64,000 nt of DNA from IMG/VR virus record IMGVR_UViG_3300034072_000758, positions 248,001 to 312,000 of that record. One strand, given 5' to 3'. The position numbers and the translations under genes are program-made. The notes beneath the pieces were generated by a model. It saw nothing but the letters and a program-made list of their open reading frames with translations, was not told the origin of the DNA and did no database searches. This document shows, piece after piece, positions 6,899 through 33,706 of this stretch (positions are counted from its first letter, which is position 1; the number at the start of each line of letters is the position of its first letter).

Positions 6899-7123
6899 TC
6901 AACTTAAAAAGTCTTTAGGGAATAATGCTATTCTACATTGACCATCACTGGTTTTAATCATACGTTCTACATGTTGATTGGATAATGTTTCTTCGGTGTG
7001 GCCGTCTGAGCAAACATCAAATGTTTTGAAACAAGAATCGCATATGACGGTGCCTTCCTCGAAGGAGGACATTTCAAACCCGCAATGTAAACACTCGAAC
7101 TTGATCATACTTCTATTTAACAT
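6899..7123 (-). CDS. Small zinc-ribbon-like protein
   Basis: CLHC...CDSC. Confidence 0.45.
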   Translation of the reverse strand: MLNRSMIKFECLHCGFEMSSFEEGTVICDSCFKTFDVCSDGHTEETLSNQHVERMIKTSDGQCRIALFPKDFLS

Positions 7124-7142
7124 ATTTTGTAACTCGATGTGA

Positions 7143-7150
7143 AATAAATA
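7143..7150 (+). promoter_or_regulatory. T4-like late promoter, 5 nt before ATG
   Basis: AATAAATA-TCCAC-ATG. Confidence 0.7.
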
Positions 7151-7155
7151 TCCAC

Positions 7156-7539
7156 ATGAGCAACTGGTATAGAAATTTGATCAACCTTCTCGAAGGCGCG
7201 GAACCATTGGTGCTTTATCACGGGACACACGCCAAGTTTGATGGTGTTCCGACCATTCCAGAAAGCGGTGCTGGTCTATATGGGCGCGGGGTTTATTTCT
7301 CGACCGATAAACGTGTTGCGCAAGGCCACGGTCCCACCATTGTCACTTGTACAGTGTCAGGAAAACTCGCCACCAATGCTCAATTGGATGCGGCTAGAGA
7401 ACAAGCATCAGAAGAAGGCTTTGTTAGATCGGAGAAGATGCATCGTGCCAGAGACATCCTTATCGATGCCGGGTATGTGGGTGTTCAGGATAAAGACCTT
7501 GTGGTGGTCTATGTTCAGGATGCTATGACGAGAGTTTAA
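7156..7539 (+). CDS. Leader-bearing ADP-ribosyltransferase-like protein
   Basis: MSNWYRNLINLLE leader; LYHGT...YGRGVYFSTD. Confidence 0.65.
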   Translation: MSNWYRNLINLLEGAEPLVLYHGTHAKFDGVPTIPESGAGLYGRGVYFSTDKRVAQGHGPTIVTCTVSGKLATNAQLDAAREQASEEGFVRSEKMHRARDILIDAGYVGVQDKDLVVVYVQDAMTRV

Positions 7540-7819
7540 GCGCATCTATCTTCGTTTGAAGCGTGGCAATCTCGTTTAGATCAATATCCACCGCTTCGAC
7601 CGAATAATACTGTTTCGATTGTTGAAATTTCGAAGCGAGGTCCAATGCTTCTCCTGCTACCAGTATAGCATCAGCTACCAAAGCGTCTGCTGCGTTTTGG
7701 ACGAAGTATTTGGATAGGATATGCGTAGTCGCATCAACCTCAGCCAGCCGGGTCGTATGATACGCCGTTAGGACTTGCTCTACGAGCTTGCGTAAATTGA
7801 GATTATTTTGATATGACAT
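7523..7819 (-). CDS. Hypothetical late protein
   Basis: TTTAAATA and AAGGA RBS upstream; N-terminus ...LRKLVE. Confidence 0.55.
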   Translation of the reverse strand: MSYQNNLNLRKLVEQVLTAYHTTRLAEVDATTHILSKYFVQNAADALVADAILVAGEALDLASKFQQSKQYYSVEAVDIDLNEIATLQTKIDALKLSS

Positions 7820-7839
7820 ACTATCCTTATATCGCATAT

Positions 7840-8331
7840 TTAAAATGTGTCAAGCCAATAGGGGGCGCGACGATTTTTCCAAAAATGAATGTGTGCTTTT
7901 TCATGTCGATAGAAAAAACGATAGCTATCAACGAAATTATCACCTCTATATTTTTCAGGCATACAAAGCGTTACAGACGTAAATGGAATGTCCGGTAAGC
8001 TATCTATCCATAAAGGGTTTTGTTCTGAGAACTGATGCCATTTTAAGAATGATTTATGAAATTTTGTTTCTGGGTGATTATAGCGGTAGCGCCATTCGTG
8101 GTGTAACGCATGAAGTAAATCTTGTAACCAAAGAGCATTGTAGCGAGATTGTCCTACCCATAACCGCGAAGGGTGGTTCCAGTGTGTTGGCTTCATAGGC
8201 GTCTCATACCCAAGAACATTTGCTGTTGTACACAAAAGTTGCGCATACTCGGAAATCATTTTTACCACATGCTTATCGACATGGTATTCTGCGCAAATTA
8301 CGGGATCGAGGTCTAAGGCAAATATATTCAT
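7840..8331 (-). CDS. Pyrimidine-dimer DNA glycosylase (DenV-like) family protein
   Basis: MNIFALD.DP..CAEYHVDKHVVKMISEYAQLL...THWNHP. Confidence 0.75.
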   Translation of the reverse strand: MNIFALDLDPVICAEYHVDKHVVKMISEYAQLLCTTANVLGYETPMKPTHWNHPSRLWVGQSRYNALWLQDLLHALHHEWRYRYNHPETKFHKSFLKWHQFSEQNPLWIDSLPDIPFTSVTLCMPEKYRGDNFVDSYRFFYRHEKAHIHFWKNRRAPYWLDTF

Positions 8332-24192: not shown

Positions 24193-25170
24193 ATGAAGAA
24201 TATTCTCGTGACTGGCGGAGCCGGATATATTGGCTCCCATACTTGTAAAGCATTATCGAAAGCTGGCTATAAGCCAATCGTCATAGACAACCTCTCTACC
24301 GGCTTTGAGAAGGCCGTACAGTGGGGTCCGCTGATTGTCGCGGACATCCAAGACAAAGAGGTTGTCTCAACGATCCTGACCGATCACAACATCGACAGCG
24401 TAATTCATTTCGCGGCGTCCAGTCAGGTGGCGGAGTCCATCGATAACCCGGACAAATATTTTACGAACAATGTTGAGAACGCCTGTCTCTTCTTGAAGAC
24501 CTGTATCGATAATGGTGTGAAGAATTTCATCTTCTCTTCGACCGCCGCTGTCTATGGTAATCCTCTGACCGACATCATCACCGAAGATCATCAGACCAAG
24601 CCTATCAATCCGTATGGCGATAGCAAGCTGGCCTTCGAGACGATCCTGCGCGAGGAAGCACCCAAGTACGCTGGGGGAGATTTCAATTCAATTGTGCTGA
24701 GATACTTCAATGCGTGTGGGGCGGATGTGGATGGGGAGATTGGCGAAGACCATGACCCGGAGACGCACCTTATCCCGCTGATCTGTAAAGCTTGGCTTAA
24801 GGGCGATCACATCCGTATCTTCGGGACCGATTACAAGACCGTAGACGGCACAGCGGTGCGAGACTATGTGGACGTGGCCGATCTTGCTGACGCCCATGTA
24901 CGGGCCTTGGAGAGCCTTCTAGGGGGTGGTTCGTCTCAGGTGTTCAATGTAGGCACCGGAGCGGGCTACAGTGTCCTACAGGTCTGTCAGATGGCATCGG
25001 GGATGATGGAGGGGTTGCGGGGTGAGAACTTGGATCGCAGACCGGGTGATCCGCGTATTCTGGTAGCGTCGAACCAAAAGATAAAAGACGCCCTCGGTTG
25101 GGAACCGAAGACGCCTTTGGAAGAGAGTATCAGGCGGACGCTTGCTTGGGAGAGGAAGAAACTCGATTAA
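24193..25170 (+). CDS. galE: UDP-glucose 4-epimerase
   Basis: VTGGAGYIGSH, HFAA, FSSTAAVYG, PYGDSK, LRYFNACGA, RDYVDV.DLA.AH, RRPGDP. Confidence 0.95.
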   Translation: MKNILVTGGAGYIGSHTCKALSKAGYKPIVIDNLSTGFEKAVQWGPLIVADIQDKEVVSTILTDHNIDSVIHFAASSQVAESIDNPDKYFTNNVENACLFLKTCIDNGVKNFIFSSTAAVYGNPLTDIITEDHQTKPINPYGDSKLAFETILREEAPKYAGGDFNSIVLRYFNACGADVDGEIGEDHDPETHLIPLICKAWLKGDHIRIFGTDYKTVDGTAVRDYVDVADLADAHVRALESLLGGGSSQVFNVGTGAGYSVLQVCQMASGMMEGLRGENLDRRPGDPRILVASNQKIKDALGWEPKTPLEESIRRTLAWERKKLD

Positions 25171-26506
25171 TTCTTATTATCTCACTCTGTTCTCTATACC
25201 ACTTATTAAATGAGCCACTTGTTCGTGATCTCATACTATGATGCCTATTATATTCGTAACTCCCCACTACAAAATTTCCCAACTTATATTCTTCTAAAAG
25301 TTCTTCCGCACTTTTAGTTGAGTTGCGCTGATTATAAATTTCATCTGTTGCTTTTCGATAAGCTTCATTTTTTGCGCGCAACCTAATATGTCGATTGTGC
25401 TCATAAGTATTTGTAACAAAAGGGCCTTTGCGAAATAATTCAATCATGGCTTCGGGCGTGATTGTTTTATTTCTTGCTTTGGAAATTTGATCAGTTTCTC
25501 TTTTATAAGCTGAATTTTTTTTACGCAATGTGTAATGGCGCTCACTCAATTTTGACCCATTTTCAAACGTGCTCACTTTAAATAGTTCCAGCATTTCCTC
25601 AGCGCTTTTAGATTTAGGGCGTGTGGCAAGAATGGCTTCGGTTTCCGCCCTGTACCACTCGTTTTTTCTACGCTGGTAGTGATGGCGGATTAATTGAGAT
25701 TTGTTAAGAAGTCCTTCTTTAAACAATTTCAGCAATTCATTTAGTTCTTCTTGAGTTGTAGCTGACCTAAATTTCCATTTAGGGTTAATACGTATAAGTT
25801 CATCGATGAACGCCGGATCGGATTTATGTAGTCGAACCACCCCAGCCCCCAGCTTACCGCTCTTTGGGCGATCTCTTCCTTGTTTTGCCAAAGACAATAA
25901 TGATGTTTTCAGTTTCTCTATATTTCTGGTTTCAAACCATTCTGGACGCAAGTTATGTATTTCGGCAGATAGCGCAGCATCATACGTTTTTGATTTTGGA
26001 TTCCAACAATATCTCATAAAAGCCATGTTTATTTTCGGATCATCCTTTCTGTTGGAGCCATCCTTCGCAAATTGTAATATCATTTGTTTAGTTCTATCTA
26101 CAGACCGTAGCCACTCTGGGTGAAGGCTAAGAACCAAAGGTCTTAAGCTAATAGGCCCACTTTGGTTTAAATAAACATATGAGCTATATCCGCTATGAAG
26201 TGGATGCCCTTGTTTAGGAGGTATTTTCTCTTCTCTGATATACTTTTCTACACGATCTCTGAGTGTAAGTAACCAATCGGGATGATGCTTCTTCACTAGA
26301 TCAATAATGTATTGTCGATGATTTTTATTTGAGGGAGAAGCATATGCCACATATGCTGGATATAAGTCATGACCTTTCTCTGGTTTTTTGCTATCAGCAT
26401 TAATAATATATTCCACCAACTGTTCCACGCGATTGCGCTTATTCTCTAACCAAGAGGGGGCTTTAGTCCTTATTTCTTTTAGTAATCTCAACTGTTGATT
26501 TAACAT
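25130..26506 (-). CDS. Basic protein with two kinds of tandem helical repeats
   Basis: Repeats ending HPDWL/HPEWL/RPEWF/NPKWK, then four units of LLELFK...RH..LR.KN..Y...T..I. Confidence 0.7.
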   Translation of the reverse strand: MLNQQLRLLKEIRTKAPSWLENKRNRVEQLVEYIINADSKKPEKGHDLYPAYVAYASPSNKNHRQYIIDLVKKHHPDWLLTLRDRVEKYIREEKIPPKQGHPLHSGYSSYVYLNQSGPISLRPLVLSLHPEWLRSVDRTKQMILQFAKDGSNRKDDPKINMAFMRYCWNPKSKTYDAALSAEIHNLRPEWFETRNIEKLKTSLLSLAKQGRDRPKSGKLGAGVVRLHKSDPAFIDELIRINPKWKFRSATTQEELNELLKLFKEGLLNKSQLIRHHYQRRKNEWYRAETEAILATRPKSKSAEEMLELFKVSTFENGSKLSERHYTLRKKNSAYKRETDQISKARNKTITPEAMIELFRKGPFVTNTYEHNRHIRLRAKNEAYRKATDEIYNQRNSTKSAEELLEEYKLGNFVVGSYEYNRHHSMRSRTSGSFNKWYREQSEIIRINRVSSSPKQASA

Positions 26507-27120
26507 TACTTAACGCCTTGTTGAATTATTTTCATACCGTCTGGTCTAATATCACCATCTGGTGATACTATGCGATATAATGTGTTTCGAGTTATTTTCA
26601 TTTTCTTACAAAAATCTTCAATAGACATATCTCTATTAGAAGATTTCAGAAAATCAACTGCTTCGTACAATTCATTTGTTGTCCAAACAAATTTACGACC
26701 TCCGGGGTTACCGATCTCTATGCCGGAAAACGTTTTATATGCTTTATACAATCTATCCAACTCACTCTTCAAGTACAAAATCGCATATATTGAAATTTTA
26801 TATTTTGAACTTATTTGTTTATCAGGACAGCCATCCAATATATCTCTACAGATTGCGTCGGTTTTTTTATCAAACAGCCCAGCAAATAATTTTTCTTTCA
26901 TGTATTTCGGCTTCTTCTCAAGCATACACTCATACGCCTGTTTGTTTGTGATGCGTTTATAGGTATCACACTCGTTTCTATATTTCTGATGTGTATCCAA
27001 ATCGGAACCAGTGAAACGCTCACCACTCAAGGTTCTTTCTAAAAAAAGTTCTTTTTTATCTTTTAGTAGGTTAGGAGCATGCATTCTGAGCATAGAAAGT
27101 AACTGTTTCTCGGTCGCCAT
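26506..27120 (-). CDS. Protein with C-terminal serine-resolvase-type HTH
   Basis: GGRKF...FCKKMKITRNTLYRIVSPDGDIRPDG. Confidence 0.65.
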   Translation of the reverse strand: MATEKQLLSMLRMHAPNLLKDKKELFLERTLSGERFTGSDLDTHQKYRNECDTYKRITNKQAYECMLEKKPKYMKEKLFAGLFDKKTDAICRDILDGCPDKQISSKYKISIYAILYLKSELDRLYKAYKTFSGIEIGNPGGRKFVWTTNELYEAVDFLKSSNRDMSIEDFCKKMKITRNTLYRIVSPDGDIRPDGMKIIQQGVK

Positions 27121-27123
27121 TAT

Positions 27124-27852
27124 TTAATACCTCGATATATTGAAAAGAATGAAATACATCGGGGAAGAAGTAGTAGTCGCCCGATATAATTTGCTATCTA
27201 TTACATTCAAAATCTTCATATCCGTTATTTCCTCTAATAGCAATGAATAAATGGCAGAGGTAACAACTTCTAAAGTATTAAGTTTTAACACACGCTCGTC
27301 TACATCATGTGTGAAAACTTCTTTCGAGATATTGTCCGTTTGGCTATACATTTCTTCTTCGGAAAGATAAGCGTTATCGGACAAGAAGCGATAGAACCAA
27401 TCGGCAGTACCTCTTGGTGTTCTTTGGAATGTTACTCCAAGAATTAAATTTTTCTGGGAAGCATATTTAACAAAATCACAAATATCGGACATTATACTTT
27501 CTGATGGCGCTCCCATATAATCTAAAAAGGCAGCGTCGTGTTTTATCTTATCCGTTTCTGGATTATTGATATATTGGTGATTTATGTACTTATTCACCGA
27601 GCAATTGTACATGTGAATAAATGGATGCGCCGTCATAATACTATGATATATAGTCGTATCTATTTCACAGCCAACCAAGCGAATATTAGGCCATTTTGAT
27701 CGAAGTAATTTGGCATCATGAGCTTCCGCACTAGGAAGCAAGAATGTGTATTTCGGCTCTATTAAATGATTACTAAGAGCCGTAATAAAAGATTCTCTAC
27801 ATTCTTGCTTATGGCCTTCTGATGTATCGAACGGCATGTTCATCCGATCCAC
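27124..27852 (-). CDS. Class I SAM-dependent methyltransferase-like protein
   Basis: FLLPS...LVGCEID...DAAFLDYMG...LGVTF Rossmann-type pattern. Confidence 0.5.
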   Translation of the reverse strand: MDRMNMPFDTSEGHKQECRESFITALSNHLIEPKYTFLLPSAEAHDAKLLRSKWPNIRLVGCEIDTTIYHSIMTAHPFIHMYNCSVNKYINHQYINNPETDKIKHDAAFLDYMGAPSESIMSDICDFVKYASQKNLILGVTFQRTPRGTADWFYRFLSDNAYLSEEEMYSQTDNISKEVFTHDVDERVLKLNTLEVVTSAIYSLLLEEITDMKILNVIDSKLYRATTTSSPMYFILFNISRY

Positions 27853-29441
27853 TCCATGTTTTCATCATACTTTTCATTCAGGGCGCGCATCTGTTTTAAC
27901 AGGGGGCGGAACTCCACCGGACAGCTTTTAGCAGTCCCATCAAAAGAATCGCTATGTAAGAAATCCATGAATTTTTGGATAGTTAATGTTTCGGTATATT
28001 GTTTTGGATCACCGAATACGCGAAGGAAGGGAACGGCATTTGTGATCTTGCTTTTACGTGCCTCTCGAACAAAAAACAACGAGTTCTTTCTAAGTGTCAC
28101 TTGCGTGGAAACAATGCCAAGTTTTTCACAAATTTTCGAAAGAGCTTCATCATTCAGAGTTACTTGTTCGCATTGATTCTCATTAATTTCTATATTAGTA
28201 TCTGTGTCAGAAATACCATCGGCTTGAGTTCTAACAGCAGCGGTAAAAACCGAAGAACGATCATCGTCAGACAATTCTTCGTGCATATGAACAAAATTTT
28301 GAATGTCGCGTGAATAGAAATATTGACTGATGGGCTTGTTATCACATACTCGCGCAATTCGTCCGATACGTTGAATCAGACGAGAAATAGATTGCGTTGT
28401 AAAACGACTCAAAGTTCGACAATCGAACGCTAGTTCTAAGTCCGGTAAGTCGAAACCTTCTTGTAGCATACCAACTACGAAAATAGCATCCAGCGTTTTG
28501 TTCTTGAAATCGGCAATCCGATTTAAGGCGTGTGAAGTCTTACCGTGCGCGGCTCCCCCAAATTTTTTAATTCCGTACCGTTGAGCATACTTATTGAACT
28601 CGCGCGCAGCAAACTCGGCATCAGCGATCTGAGGGCAAAAGAAAATAGCTTGCTTGTTAGTATGACTAAATAGCTTAAAATACAGAGCGATCATTTCCAT
28701 ATGTCGAGCTTTGACAATGGCGTTCCGAGACTCGACTAAATTTACGCCAATCCCGTCTCTTTTACAAATCTTTGCCAGTTCCTCTAAGCTGTCGGCCTCG
28801 CGCGTTTCGATTTCTTGAAAATTTTGCCCCGTGGTATTTTGAAACTCTTCAATTTTCAAACGAAGTCCAGTCTCAACTTCGAGCATCATAACATCATTGA
28901 TAATACCATCATGGTAAGCATCGGTGAGGCTATAAGTGTAGGTGTGTCCTTCCTTCTGGCCAAGAAGTTTTTCCTCAGCAGCTTGAATCGTCGCTGACAC
29001 GTTGATGATTTCCATCGGGCGATAAAAATTCAAAATAGCCGGAATGCTGACGCTATCCTCGTGCGCGGCCCCTAAATGGCATTCGTCAAACATCAATCGA
29101 TTTAATACGTAGGATGGGTTATGTTTAATTTCAGAGTACAAAGTTTGCCATGTGGTGATACGCACTTTGCGACCAGTTGGGGACACGTAAATGTCAGGGT
29201 CTATCGGATCAACGGTGTATCCAAATTCCACAAACTTATCTTGGTGTTGCTCAACGATTTGGTTCATACCAACAATGATTATGTTGATGCCATCGCCAAT
29301 TGCTTGCTCAGAAGCATGATGTAAAAAAAAGGTCTTACCCGAACCTGTGGGCGCACTTACGTACACATGAGGTTTTTGTTCGATACGTAAAATACGATCA
29401 ACTGCCTCAAGTGCTTCTTTTTGCCACTTTCTCAATTCCAT
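27840..29441 (-). CDS. Superfamily 2 DExH helicase/ATPase
   Basis: LRKWQ, APTGSGKT, FDECH, SAT, MLQEGFDLP, QRIGRIAR. Confidence 0.9.
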   Translation of the reverse strand: MELRKWQKEALEAVDRILRIEQKPHVYVSAPTGSGKTFFLHHASEQAIGDGINIIIVGMNQIVEQHQDKFVEFGYTVDPIDPDIYVSPTGRKVRITTWQTLYSEIKHNPSYVLNRLMFDECHLGAAHEDSVSIPAILNFYRPMEIINVSATIQAAEEKLLGQKEGHTYTYSLTDAYHDGIINDVMMLEVETGLRLKIEEFQNTTGQNFQEIETREADSLEELAKICKRDGIGVNLVESRNAIVKARHMEMIALYFKLFSHTNKQAIFFCPQIADAEFAAREFNKYAQRYGIKKFGGAAHGKTSHALNRIADFKNKTLDAIFVVGMLQEGFDLPDLELAFDCRTLSRFTTQSISRLIQRIGRIARVCDNKPISQYFYSRDIQNFVHMHEELSDDDRSSVFTAAVRTQADGISDTDTNIEINENQCEQVTLNDEALSKICEKLGIVSTQVTLRKNSLFFVREARKSKITNAVPFLRVFGDPKQYTETLTIQKFMDFLHSDSFDGTAKSCPVEFRPLLKQMRALNEKYDENMEWIG

Positions 29442-29625
29442 GAGTCAATACTCCACATCAAATTATATATGCCTGAACATTAGAAAGATTTATTTTGATA
29501 GTCAATAAAAAAATGAATTAAGACAAATACATATAATCTAATTATAACAAAATCGCATATTCTGGTTTCAAGAAGAATCAATAAGAGACAGCGTTTTTTG
29601 AAGAATAATATGCTAAAATGGAATA

Positions 29626-29808
29626 TTACTTTTTCTTACTAAACAATCCAGCGATCCCGCCAATCAACCCAACCACGGCCAGAACGATCAGTGTAGCAAG
29701 TCCGAGGAAGCCAACGACCACCAACCCAATCGAGAAAATGATCATGTTCTCGATACGGTAGCCGTCGAAGTTGTTCTCAGCCTTGTCCAAAAAATAATCA
29801 ACCAGCAT
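29626..29808 (-). CDS. Small membrane protein
   Basis: Hydrophobic C-terminal half, KKK end. Confidence 0.45.
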   Translation of the reverse strand: MLVDYFLDKAENNFDGYRIENMIIFSIGLVVVGFLGLATLIVLAVVGLIGGIAGLFSKKK

Positions 29809-29809
29809 C

Positions 29810-30352
29810 CTATGTCCTCACCTTTAAAGGTATGTATCTAGCTTCTTCGTTGGTTAGGCCGAAATAATACTTCAACAACGACTGTATTGCCGACTTTTCT
29901 TTAGAGCCAACCACGTAGAAAATATGGAAAAGAGATCGCAAAATTACAACATATACACTTTCTCCACTTTGAGGAAGGCGCGGATCACTTAGTACCTTAT
30001 TATAAAGCTTGTGTAACGAAGTTGCTTGAAGCAAAACCGTTGTGAATTGATTATCATCCGGCATGCATTTTTGTCTGAATAAAAGTACCTTACCAAGATG
30101 TATCATGAGTTCATCTGCGGTTATGTTCTCAAAATCCATGACAGTCAGGTTGTTAAACTGGATACTATCTTCCAGATTCACAATGGAATATGTTCCGATC
30201 AGATTTAGTAATACCCATGCCAGCTTAATCAAAGACTCTGGATCGGTCGTCATTTGATGATTGGGATCGAAGTACCCATAAACTATGGACTGATAGATGA
30301 CCAACCCATCATTGGTATCGAACGTTATGTTACTATGTGGTGACATGGACAC
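29810..30352 (-). CDS. Hypothetical protein
   Basis: Operonic ORF. Confidence 0.55.
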   Translation of the reverse strand: MSMSPHSNITFDTNDGLVIYQSIVYGYFDPNHQMTTDPESLIKLAWVLLNLIGTYSIVNLEDSIQFNNLTVMDFENITADELMIHLGKVLLFRQKCMPDDNQFTTVLLQATSLHKLYNKVLSDPRLPQSGESVYVVILRSLFHIFYVVGSKEKSAIQSLLKYYFGLTNEEARYIPLKVRT

Positions 30353-30567
30353 TTCGAGTTATAGCAAACATAACCCATCGGGACGGTCCAGTCGAGATTA
30401 CAGACCGGGCAGTTGGAAGGAGGTGGAATATACGGGTCACCCGTAGTCCGATGCGGTAACGGGGTGGGAGGATTACCCGTGGGTTCCTCATATTCCTGTG
30501 ATAGAAGCTCGTCTAATTTCTTCTGGTTCATGGAAAGATGATACATTAACCATGAAGCAAAAAGCAA
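30325..30567 (-). CDS. Small Cys-rich protein (start likely MNQKK)
   Basis: CPVC...GYVC...CPC. Confidence 0.55.
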   Translation of the reverse strand: MLFASWLMYHLSMNQKKLDELLSQEYEEPTGNPPTPLPHRTTGDPYIPPPSNCPVCNLDWTVPMGYVCYNSKCPCHHIVT

Positions 30568-30578
30568 TAAATAAATTC

Positions 30579-31724
30579 ATGCGTTTACTTGAGTTAAAAC
30601 ATTCCGAACAAACTGTTGTACTGTATAGAGGCGACAATAAGCGTATCGATGTGTTTGATATTGAACAAACCGATATTAAGGCTCTGTTCGGAAAAGGTAT
30701 CTATTTGACTGATAGCAAAGTAGTCGCAAAGGATTACGCAAAGAAAGGCATTAATGTATTCTTCGAGGGTGATTACCCTTCTAAGAGTAAGAAAAGTCTA
30801 CTTAACAAATACTTGTTCAAAGTCATGATGGAAGAACTTAACCTTAAAGAAAAGGTCTACATGGCGACAAACAAAAAATATGAGCCGGAATTTCCGCGAT
30901 CTGGTCCTGAGCGGGTTCAAGCCATTGCTATGCTTAAGCTGGCAGTGAAGCACGTTGTTGCCGAGACGTTAGCTAAGGCCGTCACACTTTGGAATCAGCG
31001 TCGAAAGAATGTCAAGTTCCACACTGATACAACCGGGGCAGTCGTCATGATCGACAAGTCTGTTAAGGGGAGCGTATCTGAGTTCCACATTCCGACCGAT
31101 TATATGGCGCGTGTATTGGATGGCGAAGCACCCCTCCCAGACAAAGCTTTGAAGGTCGTTCGAGACACATTCGATGCCTTCCGTAGAAGCAAAGGTGGAT
31201 CAATCGAAGATGCTTTAGATTTTAGAAGTGTTGCGCACAAAGATAGCTTGGTCACTAAACATCTGAACTTCGATCAGTTCATAAAATACTATAAATCGCA
31301 TGGTTCCGAATATGCTTGGAGTGATGATGATGTGCGTGGTGGTGATAATCAGAACCCATCATTTGACTTCATCTTCAATGGTCAACACGCCGGGGAAATT
31401 TTAAAGATCAAAGAATTTCAGGATCATTTGATCGCGGGTCTCATGACTATTGGATATGTCGGTTTCAAATATGATGGTGGTATCCGCGCTGGGGGTGCTC
31501 TGGCTCGTGGCGGTGGTGGTTTGCGTCACACAGCGTATTCATTCTGGAACGCAGAATATATCAACGCACATCGCGTCAATGATGAAGAACCAGAAGACGC
31601 AAGAAACTATAATCCAAAGGTTACCGTTGACGATTATGAATTTGCGATTAACAGTGCTGTGGGCGAATCTGTCGAGATCGCCGAGACGTTCGATACGTCG
31701 CTTGATGTAAAATACAGAGGGTAA
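30579..31724 (+). CDS. Leader-bearing ART-like (polyvalent-protein type) protein
   Basis: AATAAATA-AATTC-ATG; MRLLE; LYRG...F...LFGKGIYLTDS..VA..YA; GYVGFKY. Confidence 0.65.
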   Translation: MRLLELKHSEQTVVLYRGDNKRIDVFDIEQTDIKALFGKGIYLTDSKVVAKDYAKKGINVFFEGDYPSKSKKSLLNKYLFKVMMEELNLKEKVYMATNKKYEPEFPRSGPERVQAIAMLKLAVKHVVAETLAKAVTLWNQRRKNVKFHTDTTGAVVMIDKSVKGSVSEFHIPTDYMARVLDGEAPLPDKALKVVRDTFDAFRRSKGGSIEDALDFRSVAHKDSLVTKHLNFDQFIKYYKSHGSEYAWSDDDVRGGDNQNPSFDFIFNGQHAGEILKIKEFQDHLIAGLMTIGYVGFKYDGGIRAGGALARGGGGLRHTAYSFWNAEYINAHRVNDEEPEDARNYNPKVTVDDYEFAINSAVGESVEIAETFDTSLDVKYRG

Positions 31725-32072: not shown

Positions 32073-32477
32073 CTAACAATATTCGGGGCGCTCTGGCTGA
32101 ACTCCAAAGCAAACCATGAGACAGAGATCGTCTTGGAATTTTTCAACGTCCCCAGAGAAATACCAGCGAGCGCCGCCACCATGAATGATATTCCCGGTTT
32201 GCCAGTCGCGGTTCGAGATCGCTTCGTAGAACATCCCCGCACCTTGGGTCTCGATCCGCCATTCTTCGCAGAACATTGCGGATAAGCTGTCGCCGAAATA
32301 CAGGACGGTGAATGGCTTGCCTATAAATTCGATCACACACTCGCGGTAATTTTTCGCACAAATGATCAGGTTGCGCGGTTGAGGGATAATCTTTTCGGAC
32401 AACTTCTCACCGGTCTCCACAACATAGATAGCGTCAAGATCGATGTTGACAGGCTTATTTTTTTCAAACTTTAACAT
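32073..32477 (-). CDS. Hypothetical protein, C-terminal tail family
   Basis: FQDDLCLMVCFG near the C-terminus. Confidence 0.55.
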   Translation of the reverse strand: MLKFEKNKPVNIDLDAIYVVETGEKLSEKIIPQPRNLIICAKNYRECVIEFIGKPFTVLYFGDSLSAMFCEEWRIETQGAGMFYEAISNRDWQTGNIIHGGGARWYFSGDVEKFQDDLCLMVCFGVQPERPEYC

Positions 32478-33108
32478 GGTCTATCAACTCGTCACAGGCT
32501 TTGTTCAAGACCTCTTCGCGGGTGCCAGCGAAGGTATTCTCATGGCTCATTGGAGCATAGTAATCTCTGACCAGAATATTTTGTCTGGTCCCTATATCAT
32601 TGGCGACAACTATATCGGCCCCGGACTCACTGATTTGGCGGCGAGCCTTGGCTATTTGTGTGGTAGCGTCGTCATTGGAGGTCGTCTTGAAGCCGATCAC
32701 AAAGATGTCGGGCCGACGAAGCTTGATGTTGCTGATGATCTTCTTCGATGGTGTCAGGACCATAGTGTGTGGACCATCGCGGGATTGTAGGCGGGGCGCG
32801 GTCTTCCCGCTGGGGACTTCATCGATCTCGCCCGTAAAGTCACAGAGAGCCACGTTGAAAATCAGGGCCGATACGCCGGGATCGGTCAGGAGAGTGTTGA
32901 CGTAGATTTCCACATCCAGATTAGTGATCAATCCTGAATGATGATCCGCCATCTTGGTGAGAACCAGTTCCGGGTTACAGTGTTCCCGAAAATAGCTCAT
33001 GTAGTCGTACATATAGCGCGCTGTTCCACCGAACGCGCGTGTACACAAAGAAAGGTGGGCGCGAACGTCATTGAACGTTCCGCCACCCATGATTACGACT
33101 TTACTCAC
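32464..33108 (-). CDS. CoaB-like (DFP C-terminal, phosphopantothenate-cysteine ligase) protein
   Basis: VVIMGGGT...NVALCDF...VIGFK...DIVVAND; GTG start at 33108. Confidence 0.7.
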   Translation of the reverse strand: MSKVVIMGGGTFNDVRAHLSLCTRAFGGTARYMYDYMSYFREHCNPELVLTKMADHHSGLITNLDVEIYVNTLLTDPGVSALIFNVALCDFTGEIDEVPSGKTAPRLQSRDGPHTMVLTPSKKIISNIKLRRPDIFVIGFKTTSNDDATTQIAKARRQISESGADIVVANDIGTRQNILVRDYYAPMSHENTFAGTREEVLNKACDELIDHVKV

Positions 33109-33706
33109 CGATGATCCTTTGGAAAACTTCGTAGAGTTCTTCGGGCAGGGAGGTCCGGCGAGCGAAGAACGTTTTATTGAGCATGTAGCTACAACGCTTC
33201 GGATGATAGCGAGGTGTAGCCACCTTCGTTTCACCATGTCTGTTGACATAGGTTTCGATTTCGAGAAGTGAATTGTTCGTGATCAGGTCTTCAACGTCGA
33301 TCAGGTCTTGGTGTGTATCAAGGCGCAAAGGGGCGCTATACTTTTCAGTCTTGAAGATTTCACAAGCGGTCTTGATCGTCTCACCAAAGACAATATCCGT
33401 ATCGAGGATGCGAACGTTTGAGCCACGATAATTGATGTTGCCACACTTATGGCGTCGGCTTACCGAACCATCAGAGCGGAACACCCGCGATAGTTGGAAG
33501 TAAGGGATTTGGAGCTTGCTCGCTATGTGGCGGTCAATAGAGATCAATACTTCACCAAGTTGAACATCAAAGTCCTTGAGACTGATGTTGGTGTGATCGA
33601 TCAGGACCACGTTCATATTCGTGTGTTGCTCAATAGCTTGCTTGAGCTTTTCTTGGAGAGCAACACCTTCTGCGGTGAAAGCCCTCAAGAGGATTTCGGT
33701 TTTCAT
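33101..33706 (-). CDS. Hypothetical protein
   Basis: GGAGG RBS. Confidence 0.65.
   Translation of the reverse strand: MKTEILLRAFTAEGVALQEKLKQAIEQHTNMNVVLIDHTNISLKDFDVQLGEVLISIDRHIASKLQIPYFQLSRVFRSDGSVSRRHKCGNINYRGSNVRILDTDIVFGETIKTACEIFKTEKYSAPLRLDTHQDLIDVEDLITNNSLLEIETYVNRHGETKVATPRYHPKRCSYMLNKTFFARRTSLPEELYEVFQRIIGE

What the first reader, a model, noticed from the sequence alone, without database searches (positions are those of the whole stretch)
25130..29441. AT-rich four-gene island: SF2 helicase, MTase-like, HTH and repeat proteins
Seen: four tightly coupled minus-strand genes, the downstream three visibly more AT-rich than flanking galE, converging on and overlapping the end of galE. 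I recognised no nuclease motif. A helicase with a methyltransferase-fold protein and basic repeat proteins recalls restriction-like or anti-phage modules, but this combination matches none I can name. Inference: a horizontally acquired defence, superinfection-exclusion or selfish module.
Basis: partly seen in the sequence, partly recalled or inferred. Interest (0 to 1): 0.62.

Follow-up and report, generated by a model that had tools for sequence, protein, structure and literature searches.

The report
Huge-phage helicase, methyltransferase-like, repeat-array module
The AT-rich four-gene block is this 517-kb soil phage's split copy of an undescribed gene set found only in large uncultivated phages: a motor helicase, an odd methyltransferase-fold partner and a fast-changing basic repeat array, whose function is still untested.

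Summary
Four translationally coupled minus-strand genes lie at 25130-29441. Their GC is 38.8% against 45.1% for the genome, the 0.16th percentile of all 4.3-kb windows. They overlap the 3' end of galE by 41 bp.

Three of the four products form a conserved module:
- a DExH SF2 helicase;
- a 239-aa class I methyltransferase-fold protein with no Pfam, PHROG or PADLOC match and a non-canonical motif I;
- a basic array of about 59-aa three-helix repeats with no Pfam or PDB relative.

Helicase and methyltransferase-like genes are adjacent in all 10 independent loci examined. These loci are on contigs of up to 568 kb, and in five the array is fused to the helicase C-terminus. Here the array is a separate protein, and an orphan HTH protein sits between it and the methyltransferase-like gene.

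Between two near-identical phages, helicase and methyltransferase-like proteins are 95-98% identical, but the array is only 55% identical. A complex prediction supports helicase–methyltransferase-like binding.

No nuclease was found. The module has no relatives in IMG/VR or GenBank phages. In 185,579 prokaryote species genomes only the helicase was searched, and it gave one distant hit.

Best reading: a nuclease-free translocase–methyltransferase complex aimed by a variable array, used in phage conflict. The function is inferred, not shown.

The parts
29442..29625 (-). AT-rich 184-bp intergenic leader upstream of the helicase gene. Promoter-like elements read by eye: TTGAAA (29571-29566), a 19-nt spacer, then TGT-TATAAT (29549-29541, extended -10). 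GGAG lies 9 nt before the ATG.
   Evidence: Sequence; GC 0.35-0.36. The consensus scan did not list it because the spacer exceeds 18 nt. Inference only.
27840..29441 (-). SF2 DExH helicase/translocase (533 aa, P0001). It has no nuclease domain and starts directly at the Q motif.
   Evidence: ResIII 7e-16 and Helicase_C 3e-9; phrog_16 1e-33. Motifs Q, I, II, III, V and VI are invariant across 14 family members. It is 37% identical over 503 aa to the 865-aa helicase-repeat fusion of a 568-kb scaffold.
27124..27843 (-). Methyltransferase-fold protein (239 aa from the ATG at 27843; P0006/P0002). Its start overlaps the helicase stop as ATGA.
   Evidence: No Pfam, PHROG, PADLOC or NCBIfam hit. The exhaustive HMMER search gave 48 hits at E<=0.001, 35 of them full-length proteins of about 200-260 aa. 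AF2 model pLDDT 92. Class I SAM methyltransferase fold: Foldseek E 4e-7; VIA Z 15.8, rmsd 3.2 A over 167 residues. Motif I reads LPSxxA, not GxGxG; E60 and D108 are conserved.
26506..27120 (-). Basic 204-aa orphan protein (P0003, pI 9.25) with a weak C-terminal helix-turn-helix (about aa 155-192, nt 26545-26658).
   Evidence: HTH_7, HTH_26 and HTH_11 at E 0.014-0.08, all below cut-off; phrog_11187 at 0.004. No homologue in any related locus or in GenBank phages. Its N-terminal 20 aa weakly resemble the start of P0004 (z 3.5).
25766..26506 (-). N-terminal half of P0004 (aa 1-247): four diverged 'A' repeats, each three helices ending in P-x-W-F/L. They are homologous to the arrays fused to, or encoded next to, the helicases of other loci.
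   Evidence: HMM of 27 canonical repeats against P0004: E 6e-12 in a test set of eight proteins and 2e-9 against the 2,651 ORFs of the genome. phmmer against the L015, L016 and L004 arrays: 2.5e-19 to 6e-16. In-register alignment. AF2 pLDDT 85.7, all-helical. No PDB match.
25172..25765 (-). C-terminal half of P0004 (aa 248-445): four 'B' repeats of about 47-52 aa, basic (pI 9.85), specific to this phage.
   Evidence: Pairwise local alignment scores are 7-15 sd above shuffles. No match in other loci. No significant match to the variant repeats of L008 (E 0.17).
25084..25118 (-). Terminator-like hairpin (16-bp stem, then a T-rich tail) 12 nt after the P0004 stop, lying inside the 3' end of the convergent galE gene.
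   Evidence: A consensus match only.

Best explanation
The block is one phage's version of a conserved, phage-restricted three-part machine.

Shown:
- An SF2 DExH helicase, a small class I methyltransferase-fold protein and a strongly basic array of about 59-aa three-helix repeats are always encoded together. They appear in shuffled order and in fused or split states.
- Here the array is split off as P0004, and an orphan HTH protein is inserted between it and the methyltransferase-like gene.

Supported by prediction:
- The methyltransferase-fold subunit docks on the second RecA lobe of the helicase.

Inferred:
- The array is the targeting part. It is basic, has a conserved scaffold with variable loops and a variable helix 2, and has been swapped or diversified between two near-identical phages.
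- The array brings the ATP-driven translocase and its methyltransferase-like partner to particular nucleic-acid sites, most likely DNA.
- The logic is that of a Type I restriction-modification enzyme (motor, methylase, variable specificity subunit) but without the nuclease.
- The complex would mark or remodel nucleic acid rather than cut it.
- The most likely use is in phage-host or phage-phage conflict, for example protective self-modification or counter-defence.
- The block has its own promoter-like leader and a terminator-like hairpin, so it is probably an autonomous accessory operon.
For: Linkage:
- The helicase and methyltransferase-like genes are adjacent in 10 of 10 independent loci, mostly with a 4-bp overlap.
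- Order and fusion state vary. Helicase+array fusion then methyltransferase-like gene: L004, L021, L016, L022, L008, L012. Helicase, array, array, methyltransferase-like: L015. Methyltransferase-like, helicase, array, array: L013. Methyltransferase-like then helicase: L020.
- The pairing holds even for the distant methyltransferase-like subgroup P0022.
- Distant helicase relatives outside the clade lack both partners.

Activity and fold:
- All helicase motifs are invariant across the family.
- Methyltransferase fold. The beta2 acid E60 and the motif IV acid D108 are conserved.

Complex prediction:
- Score 0.69, best of 3 controls 0.00.
- That mark was reached by 58 of 80 solved complexes and 2 of 110 mismatched pairs. 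The counts hold only roughly, because my own alignments were used.
- The runs agree in at least 0% of their contacts. The partner's pLDDT is at least 78. One of the three runs scored 0.00.
- The interface is helicase 280-316, which includes the family-invariant F282 and near-invariant N283, with methyltransferase-like 158-214 and 239.

Array:
- pI is 9.4-10.1 in every locus.
- Entropy is concentrated after the PRP motif, in helix 2 and in the loop before YDP.
- L004 versus L021: flanking genes are 96-99% identical in protein, helicase core 95%, methyltransferase-like 98.3%, array 55% with 6 versus 5 repeats.
- DNA identity falls from 87-100% to 22-58% over the array and the linker just before it (L004 6809-7965; array 6943-7995).
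- A-like repeats share one protein with DUF723 zinc fingers and an HNH_3-like end in L013. A DUF723 gene sits next to the module in L022. DUF723 is described as a DNA-binding zinc finger of phage homing endonucleases (bioRxiv 10.1101/2023.03.23.533998).

Accessory and phage-restricted:
-.
Against: - No methyl transfer, SAM binding, ATPase activity or nucleic-acid binding has been measured.
- The glycine-rich SAM loop is replaced by LPSxxA, so the subunit could be a pseudo-enzyme.
- The fold matches do not single out DNA methyltransferases. rRNA, tRNA, protein and small-molecule methyltransferases tie at Z 13-16.
- The repeat unit has no structural relative, so nucleic-acid binding rests on charge and on domain company only.
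- Hypervariability rests on a single informative pair of phages. The other close pairs are identical throughout.
- One of the three complex runs failed.
- The HTH protein and the B repeats are unexplained by this model.
- No expression data exist. Only DNA runs hold the locus.
Confidence: 0.4

Rival explanations
1. A phage-carried defence or superinfection-exclusion system. The array recognises invading DNA, the helicase translocates on it, and the methyltransferase-like subunit marks self, as in restriction-modification, DISARM or BREX.
For: Helicase plus methyltransferase-fold plus a variable specificity element is the composition of restriction-like systems. The block is accessory, AT-rich and has its own operon signals. 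The array is swapped between near-identical phages, as expected for conflict genes. There are weak helicase matches to PbeA and Type I R models.
Against: No nuclease, toxin or other effector is found in the window or in most loci. The methyltransferase-like, HTH and repeat proteins have no significant PADLOC match. The helicase clade has one distant hit in 185,579 prokaryote species genomes and none in IMG/VR, unlike known defence systems.
Confidence: 0.2
2. An RNA-directed module. The DExH helicase remodels an rRNA, tRNA or mRNA, and the partner methylates it, as part of the translation-related gene load of huge phages.
For: Among the nearest solved folds are RsmD-like, RlmI/RlmO-like, Trm11/Trm14/TrmN and Trm1 RNA methyltransferases. 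The profile weakly matches RsmD-like HI0767 over beta2-beta4. Some loci carry lysyl- and arginyl-tRNA synthetase, RF-1-domain or RNA ligase genes nearby.
Against: The Z-scores tie with small-molecule and protein methyltransferases. A rapidly swapped targeting array is unexpected for a conserved RNA target. The repeats keep company with DNA-binding zinc fingers and an HNH-like domain. The neighbouring genes differ from locus to locus.
Confidence: 0.15
3. The methyltransferase-fold protein is a catalytically dead structural or regulatory subunit. The helicase-array complex works purely as a DNA translocase or remodeller, for example displacing host proteins or serving replication or recombination.
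For: Motif I lacks all glycines (LPSxxA) across the family. No methyltransferase Pfam model reaches its cut-off, with only weak Methyltransf_35 hits in 5 of 25 members. The helicase's distant relatives in cultured phages are replication-module helicases at 20-25% identity.
Against: The acidic residue at the end of beta2 (E60), the motif IV aspartate (D108) and other pocket-region residues are conserved over 25 divergent sequences. This is hard to explain for a mere scaffold. The module is not inside a replication gene cluster. Its methyltransferase-like and repeat genes have no match in the GenBank phage collection, which holds the nearest cultured relatives.
Confidence: 0.15
4. A selfish, homing-type mobile cassette whose repeats are the DNA-binding arms of a homing endonuclease lineage.
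For: In L013 a protein joins A-like repeats, DUF723 zinc fingers and an HNH_3-like end. A DUF723 gene flanks the module in L022. GIY-YIG or HNH genes lie within a few kb in L004, L012 and L021. The block is AT-rich and its position differs between phages.
Against: No nuclease is present in the window's block or in most modules. Helicase and methyltransferase-fold genes are not parts of known homing endonuclease genes. No flanking repeats or target duplication were found.
Confidence: 0.05

Closest known systems
Type I restriction-modification enzymes (HsdR, HsdM, HsdS)
   Same: Three-part logic: a ResIII-type SF2 ATP-driven motor, a Rossmann-fold methyltransferase subunit, and a separate or swappable variable specificity element. 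The genes are tightly linked. The helicase gives weak matches to EcoAI-type R models.
   Different: There is no nuclease domain on the motor. The methyltransferase-fold protein is not of the N6_Mtase family, lacks NPPY/F and the glycine loop, and has only 239 aa. The specificity element is a tandem array of 59-aa helical repeats, not an HsdS with two target-recognition domains. The helicase clade is found on phage-like contigs, with one distant hit in prokaryote genomes.
Phage P1 DarB and 'polyvalent proteins' of phages and conjugative elements (helicase plus methyltransferase, often with ART-PolyVal domains).
   Same: A phage-encoded pairing of a DExH/SF2 helicase with a methyltransferase and no nuclease, thought to counter host restriction. 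ART-PolyVal-like genes lie close to the module in the window (30498-31724) and in L014.
   Different: DarB and polyvalent proteins are giant single polypeptides with canonical N6-adenine methyltransferase domains. Here the parts are small and separate, the methyltransferase fold is an orphan family, and there is a repeat array. Virion packaging is untested.
DISARM and BREX-type defence systems (helicase plus methyltransferase plus accessory genes)
   Same: An SF2 helicase is genetically coupled to a methyltransferase in a conflict context.
   Different: None of their signature proteins (DrmB, DrmC, PglZ, BrxC and others) is present. PADLOC finds no component apart from generic helicase similarity. 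The module's helicase clade is essentially restricted to phage-like contigs.
Helicases with C-terminal tandem 'HA' (helicase-associated, PF03457) three-helix domains. Resemblance recalled from memory.
   Same: Architecture: a ResIII/Helicase_C core followed by several copies of a 55-65-aa predicted three-helix module.
   Different: No sequence match of the arrays to PF03457, even at E<=10, and no HA match in the genome. No profile-profile test could be run.
Repeated DNA-binding modules of phage T5orf172 homing endonucleases (CapR, DUF723, DUF4397; bioRxiv 10.1101/2023.03.23.533998)
   Same: Tandem, exchangeable binding modules that diversify quickly. DUF723 fingers co-occur with A-like repeats in one protein (L013) and flank the module in L022.
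   Different: The A repeat is helical and has no cysteine or zinc motif. It is attached to a helicase rather than to a nuclease.

Membership tests
SF2 helicase (ResIII / DExH type) | Motifs Q, I (GxGKT/S), II (DExH), III (SAT), V and VI (QxxGRxxR) in two RecA-like lobes | tested here: met
   ResIII, DEAD and Helicase_C are above Pfam cut-offs. W6-Q7, G35-K36, D119-E120, S149-A150-T151, V322-D331 and Q357-G360-R361-R364 are invariant in 14 sequences.
Class I SAM-dependent methyltransferase superfamily | Seven-stranded Rossmann-like methyltransferase fold | tested here: met
   AF2 pLDDT 92. All top 50 Foldseek PDB hits are methyltransferases, best E 4e-7. VIA Z 15.8, rmsd 3.2 A, 167 residues aligned. 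ESM Atlas neighbours are methyltransferase families.
Class I SAM-dependent methyltransferase superfamily | Glycine-rich motif I (E/DxGxGxG) after beta1 | tested here: not met
   The loop reads L-P-S-x-x-A across 25 members. L36 is near-invariant, P37 invariant, and there are no glycines.
Class I SAM-dependent methyltransferase superfamily | Acidic residue at the end of beta2 (ribose contact) and a motif IV acid at the end of beta4 | tested here: met
   E60 is conserved in at least 90% of members (GVExD). D108 is invariant (FDxAFLDYxG). Strand positions come from the model.
Class I SAM-dependent methyltransferase superfamily | SAM binding and methyl transfer | not testable with these tools
   No ligand test was run. 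This needs biochemistry.
Type I restriction-modification system | HsdR carries a PD-(D/E)XK nuclease domain | tested here: not met
   The helicase begins at the Q motif (residue 1-7). No nuclease family is found in any library.
Type I restriction-modification system | HsdM of the N6_Mtase family with NPPY/F, and HsdS of the Methylase_S family | tested here: not met
   There are no Pfam, NCBIfam or PADLOC hits for P0002. P0003 and P0004 have none in NCBIfam and only sub-threshold, unrelated ones in Pfam and PADLOC. Motif IV is LDYxG.
Any anti-phage defence system in PADLOC-DB 2.0 | Signature proteins of a system are present together | tested here: not met
   Only generic helicase similarity was found (PbeA 1e-10, REase_I 1e-9). 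There was nothing for the methyltransferase-like protein, and nothing significant for P0003 (mad1, 0.029) or P0004 (PtuA, 0.009).
HA (helicase-associated) domain, PF03457 | Match to the Pfam HA model | tested here: not met
   No HA hit for five repeat arrays at E<=10. No match in the genome, though the control genomes also did not ring. Profile-profile comparison was not possible.
Homing endonuclease gene | A nuclease domain (HNH, GIY-YIG, T5orf172, LAGLIDADG) in the cassette | tested here: not met
   None is present in the four window proteins. An HNH_3-like end, read by eye, is seen only in the last protein of L013.
The module described here (helicase, methyltransferase-like protein, A-repeat array) | Orthologous helicase, adjacent methyltransferase-like gene and an A-type array in one cluster | tested here: met
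   P0001 is 37% identical to P0058, E 1e-103. P0002 matches the family HMM at 5e-76. P0004 matches the repeat HMM at 6e-12 and gives phmmer 2.5e-19.

The most novel reading that the evidence does not exclude
The 59-aa three-helix repeats are a new class of modular, exchangeable nucleic-acid recognition units. Arrays of them aim a nuclease-free translocase-methyltransferase complex at chosen sequences. This would be a phage-only relative, in logic, of Type I restriction-modification enzymes that writes or remodels rather than cuts. The array would act as a swappable specificity cassette in an arms race.
Probability: 0.2. Interest if true: 0.85.

Novelty: new variant of a known kind. Interest (0 to 1): 0.64.

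Why it matters
Huge phages carry many accessory genes of unknown use. Here three orphan parts are tied into one recurring unit, with testable predictions:
- a motor and a methyltransferase-fold partner that should bind each other;
- a basic repeat array that changes wholesale between near-identical phages and should set the target.

If the methyltransferase-fold protein is active, this is a new family with an unusual cofactor loop. It would also be a new way for phages to mark or protect nucleic acid.

If the repeats read sequence in a modular way, they would be of interest beyond phage biology.

Even if the function proves modest, the methyltransferase-like family and the repeat family both lack any Pfam or PHROG model. 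They deserve one.

Tried and rejected
Searches that found nothing:
- Close relatives of the whole region in GenBank phages by megablast: none.
- Relatives in IMG/VR by peptide patterns for P0001, P0002, P0004 and the family alignments: none confirmed. One alignment was too diverse to use.
- JGI metagenome contig scans: the first found nothing, the second only two distant helicases.
- Genome scan of 185,579 species with the helicase alignment: one distant helicase in a Tannerella MAG, without partners.
- Word-index protein search: P0002 and P0004 found only themselves. Relatives of P0002 appeared only in the exhaustive HMMER search.
- tblastn of P0002, P0003, P0004 and a canonical array against GenBank phages: no match.
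- Paralogues inside the 517-kb genome: none.
- Papers naming PF20553, PF28273 or Methyltransf_35: none.
- PP_RS20740 appears only as a hypothetical protein in a furfural-tolerance study.
- A general search for a described huge-phage helicase-methyltransferase-repeat system gave nothing relevant.

Structure and family tests that gave no assignment:
- PDB sequence search with the helicase: none. With the methyltransferase-like profile: only sub-threshold hits.
- Fold of the repeat array: Foldseek best E 0.16, VIA best Z 4.8 over about 50 residues. No assignment.
- ESM Atlas for P0004: nothing usable.
- BFVD for the methyltransferase-like model: generic methyltransferases only.
- HA domain link: not supported by HMM.
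- B repeats against the variant repeats of L008: not significant.

Other checks:
- Flanking direct or inverted repeats that would mark an insertion: only short, chance-like matches.
- Module GC in other loci is close to that of their flanks, so AT-richness is peculiar to this phage.
- Reads: the same sequence occurs in two samples of one study, with no variant lacking the block and no RNA run.
- Searching the records behind L004, L012 and L016 for flank synteny: those records are not held.
- A second informative pair for array divergence: the other close pairs are identical.

Full report
**1. Setting**

The window is bases 248001-312000 of a 516,805-bp virus record with direct terminal repeats, judged complete. 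Its large terminase is 52-55% identical to those of Sinorhizobium phage Phosso (469 kb) and Agrobacterium phage Atu_ph07 (490 kb). It is therefore a very large tailed phage of that broad group. The same sequence, letter for letter, lies in contigs from two samples of one study, labelled subsurface and soil metagenome. No RNA run holds it, and no variant lacking the block was seen. Table 11 reads the region without trouble, and no other genetic code was used.

**2. The observation**

- The helicase stop and the next start overlap as ATGA, taking the ATG at 27843 that the database record uses.
- The next two junctions are TAA-ata-ATG and TAATG.
- The last gene runs 41 bp into the 3' end of the convergent galE.
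- GC is 42.1% for the helicase and 36.2%, 34.6% and 38.3% for the three genes after it. galE is 52.5% and the genome 45.1%.
- The block as a whole is at the 0.16th percentile of all windows of its size.
- A 184-bp AT-rich leader precedes the helicase gene. By eye it carries TTGAAA, a 19-nt spacer and an extended -10 (TGTTATAAT), then GGAG before the ATG.
- A 16-bp-stem hairpin with a T-rich tail follows the last stop, inside galE.

The promoter and terminator are consensus matches only.

**3. The four proteins**

*P0001 (533 aa).*
- It is an SF2 DExH helicase: ResIII, DEAD and Helicase_C are above cut-off, and phrog_16 scores 1e-33.
- It starts at the Q motif.
- No nuclease domain appears in any library.
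- Its best matches in cultured phages are replication-type helicases at only 20-25% identity.

*P0002 (239 aa).*
- It matches nothing in Pfam, PHROGs, NCBIfam or PADLOC.
- It was alone in the word-index search.
- Because the claim rested on absence, the exhaustive HMMER search was used once. It gave 48 hits at E<=0.001, of which 35 are full-length proteins of about 200-260 aa.
- With 25 of them as an alignment, AlphaFold2 gave a model of pLDDT 92.
- The model is a class I SAM methyltransferase fold. All of the top 50 Foldseek hits are methyltransferases, best E 4e-7.
- VIA gives Z 15.8, rmsd 3.2 A over 167 residues, with RsmD-like, RlmI/RlmO-like and Trm11-like enzymes and many small-molecule methyltransferases tied within about 2 Z units.
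- The ESM Atlas view agrees.
- The family is unusual. The glycine loop after beta1 is replaced by L-P-S-x-x-A.
- The acid at the end of beta2 (E60, in GVExD) and the motif IV aspartate (D108, in FDxAFLDYxG) are conserved. So are K12-Q13-x-x-R16 in the first helix and a C-terminal S-x-x-M-x-F.
- Only 5 of 25 members touch Pfam Methyltransf_35, all below cut-off.
- Whether it binds SAM cannot be decided here.

*P0003 (204 aa, pI 9.25).*
- It has a sub-threshold C-terminal HTH.
- It has no relative anywhere I could look.

*P0004 (458 aa, pI 9.9).* It holds two repeat types.
- Residues 1-247 are four diverged copies of a unit I call A.
- Residues 248-445 are four copies of a 47-52-aa unit B. Pairwise scores among the B units are 7-15 sd above shuffles.

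None of the four proteins has a paralogue in the genome.

**4. Synteny: the key result**

I looked up contigs that encode relatives of the methyltransferase-like protein and of the helicase. Every independent locus showed the same partnership.

| Locus | Contig size | Gene order (aa) |
|---|---|---|
| L004 | 568-kb scaffold | helicase + 6 A repeats (865), then methyltransferase-like (231), 4-bp overlap |
| L021 | 223 kb | helicase + 5 A repeats (805), methyltransferase-like (231) |
| L016/L017 | 263-295 kb | helicase + 6 A repeats (859), methyltransferase-like (233) |
| L022-L024 | up to 123 kb | DUF723 protein (299), helicase + 5 A repeats (807), methyltransferase-like (216, distant subgroup) |
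| L008-L011 | 3-14 kb | helicase + seven variant repeats (947), small 45-aa ORF on the opposite strand (called in L008/L009), methyltransferase-like (244) |
| L012 | 82 kb | helicase + another repeat variant (900), methyltransferase-like (245) |
| L015 | 24 kb | helicase (573), 7-repeat protein (424), 9-repeat protein (513), methyltransferase-like (238) |
| L013/L014 | 87 kb | methyltransferase-like (248), helicase (571), repeat protein (569), repeats + DUF723 fingers + HNH_3-like end (561) |
| L020 | 146 kb, terminase nearby | methyltransferase-like (234), helicase (901), 479-aa protein |
| Window | 517 kb | helicase (533), methyltransferase-like (239), HTH protein (204), array protein (458) |

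- Short fragments (L002, L003, L005-L007) show a repeat protein ending just before the methyltransferase-like gene.
- P0001 is 37% identical over 503 residues to the L004 helicase core, E 1e-103.
- The canonical repeat consensus is VDTAAKNKAELLALPVGSPRPKSKKTKLGKALTRYTNKSSSSYDPEFDAQIRAKFPHWF.
- Residues 1-247 of P0004 match the repeat HMM at E 6e-12 in a test set of eight proteins, and at 2e-9 against the 2,651 ORFs of the genome.
- They match the arrays of L015, L016 and L004 by phmmer at 2.5e-19 to 6e-16.
- They align in register, with the P-x-W ends invariant.
- Helicases just outside this clade (L018, L026) have neither partner.

Shuffled gene order with repeated fusion and fission of the same three parts is strong evidence that they work together. 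The window's block is a split version with one extra, lineage-specific gene (P0003) and an extra repeat type (B).

**5. Do the parts touch?**

A complex prediction of the helicase with the methyltransferase-like protein passed.
- Score 0.69, best of 3 controls 0.00.
- That mark was reached by 58 of 80 solved complexes and 2 of 110 mismatched pairs. The counts hold only roughly, because my own alignments were used.
- The runs agree in at least 0% of their contacts. The partner's pLDDT is at least 78.
- One of the three runs scored 0.00.
- The interface joins helicase residues 280-316 in the second RecA lobe to methyltransferase-like residues 158-214 and 239. The helicase stretch includes the family-invariant F282 and near-invariant N283.

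This supports binding but does not show it.

**6. What the array looks like**

- The A region of P0004 folds as a string of three-helix units (pLDDT 85.7, pTM 0.53).
- It has no informative match among solved structures: Foldseek best E 0.16, VIA best Z 4.8.
- No Pfam family, including HA (PF03457), matches the arrays.
- All arrays are strongly basic, pI 9.4-10.1, while the methyltransferase-like proteins are acidic to neutral.
- Across 27 canonical repeats the scaffold is conserved (K-x-x-L-L-A-L-P, G-S-P-R-P, L-G, Y-T, Y-D-P-x-F, I-R-A, P-x-W-F). Variation concentrates right after PRP, on helix 2 and in the loop before YDP.

The most telling comparison is between L004 and L021, which are near-identical phages.
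- Flanking genes are 96-99% identical in protein, the helicase core 95% and the methyltransferase-like protein 98.3%.
- The array is only 55% identical and has six versus five repeats.
- At DNA level, identity drops from 87-100% to 22-58% over L004 6809-7965, which covers the linker just before the array and the array itself (6943-7995). It then returns to 99-100%.
- This is the behaviour of a specificity cassette.
- It is one pair only. The other close pairs I hold are identical throughout.

**7. Distribution**

- The word-index search found only 16 helicases of this clade among 5.8 billion clusters, mostly on contigs of 24 to 568 kb.
- No relatives were confirmed in IMG/VR.
- The methyltransferase-like and repeat proteins have no match in GenBank phages. 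This collection includes Atu_ph07 and Phosso, the phages with the closest terminases.
- The helicase search of one genome for each of 185,579 prokaryote species gave a single distant helicase.
- So the module looks like an accessory gene set of large, presumably virulent, uncultivated phages, and not like a bacterial defence island.
- In other loci its GC matches the flanks. The AT-richness is peculiar to this phage and is the only sign of recent acquisition. No flanking repeats or integrase were found.

**8. Mechanism**

*Shown:*
- the three parts are linked;
- the helicase has intact motifs;
- the partner has a methyltransferase fold with conserved acidic residues but no glycine loop;
- the array is basic, modular and variable.

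*Inferred:*
- The array binds nucleic acid, most likely DNA, given its company with DUF723 zinc fingers and an HNH-like end. DUF723 is described as a DNA-binding finger of phage homing endonucleases (bioRxiv 10.1101/2023.03.23.533998).
- The array sets where the ATP-driven motor and its methyltransferase-like partner act.
- The logic is that of a Type I restriction-modification enzyme without the nuclease.
- For a phage, the most plausible use is marking or remodelling DNA in conflict with hosts or rival phages, as protective modification or counter-defence.

I put 0.4 on this overall reading. I put about 0.9 on the statement that this is a conserved functional module. I put only about 0.25 on DNA methylation for counter-defence specifically.

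*Rivals:*
- a phage-borne defence or exclusion system (0.2);
- an RNA-directed helicase-methyltransferase (0.15);
- a dead methyltransferase fold serving as a scaffold for a pure translocase (0.15, and partly compatible with the others);
- a homing-type selfish cassette (0.05).

P0003 may be an operon regulator or an extra DNA-binding subunit. Nothing tests this.

**9. Comparison with known systems**

The module works like a Type I restriction-modification enzyme in outline, but it fails every membership feature except the motor: no nuclease, no N6_Mtase, no HsdS. It recalls P1 DarB and the 'polyvalent' helicase-methyltransferase proteins of phages. That resemblance is from memory, and the domains here are different families. 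PADLOC finds no system. The helicase-plus-tandem-three-helix architecture recalls Pfam HA-domain helicases, but no sequence link was detected. I therefore file it as a new variant of a known kind (helicase-coupled methyltransferase modules). Two of its component families, the methyltransferase-like protein and the A repeat, are undescribed.

Noticed in passing
window 30498-31724 (+); L014 7089-7658 (-): The 408-aa protein encoded just beyond the minus-strand block has a sub-threshold ART-PolyVal/DUF3990-like N-terminus (E 5e-5). An ART-PolyVal gene also lies three genes from the module in L014. The two align weakly (E 4e-4). This is a possible recurring neighbour, seen in two of about ten loci.
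   Followed up: partly
window 24193-25170 (+): A full-length UDP-glucose 4-epimerase-like gene (galE; Epimerase 7e-53, phrog_540 9e-67) is carried by the phage at 52.5% GC. Its last 41 bp also encode the C-terminus of P0004 on the other strand. The block's terminator-like hairpin (25084-25118) lies inside its coding sequence.
   Followed up: partly
L013 9397-11082 (same protein in L014 3944-5629): A 561-aa protein joins A-like repeats, two DUF723-type zinc-finger units and, by eye, an HNH_3-like C-terminus. It looks like a homing endonuclease that shares the module's repeat type.
   Followed up: partly
L004 6809-7965 versus L021: There is a sharp mosaic boundary. DNA identity between two otherwise 87-100% identical phage contigs falls to 22-58% over the repeat array and the linker before it, with six versus five repeats.
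   Followed up: yes
L022-L024, flanks of the module: The module sits between a class I lysyl-tRNA synthetase gene and an arginyl-tRNA synthetase gene, next to a Na+/H+ exchanger gene. The contigs carrying this methyltransferase-like protein reach 0.2-1 Mb. Whether this is a huge phage or a small cellular genome was not settled.
   Followed up: no
P0002 residues 116-160 (window about 27364-27498): In the exhaustive search, this stretch alone hit 5-9 separate segments in each of several long proteins of 565-1749 aa (P0025, P0028, P0034 and others; E 3e-10 to 7e-4). The cause is unexplained; it may be a repeated motif or a composition effect.
   Followed up: no
window 29626-29808 (-) and 29810-30352 (-): Two more minus-strand genes lie upstream of the AT-rich leader. 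One is a 60-aa hydrophobic protein with a faint holin-like match (E 0.008). The other is a 180-aa orphan. They are probably a separate transcription unit.
   Followed up: no
window 26775-26788 and 29547-29560: An exact 14-nt direct repeat, ACAAAATCGCATAT, occurs inside the P0003 gene and again in the leader, overlapping the spacer of the promoter-like site. It may be chance.
   Followed up: no
L002 1625-2104: Directly after the methyltransferase-like gene lies a 159-aa protein with a signal-peptide-like start and a weak HNH motif (E 0.1).
   Followed up: no
window 32464-33249 (-): A 261-aa protein matches the DFP (DNA/pantothenate metabolism flavoprotein) C-terminal domain at E 5e-8. This is an unusual metabolic gene for a phage.
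   Followed up: no
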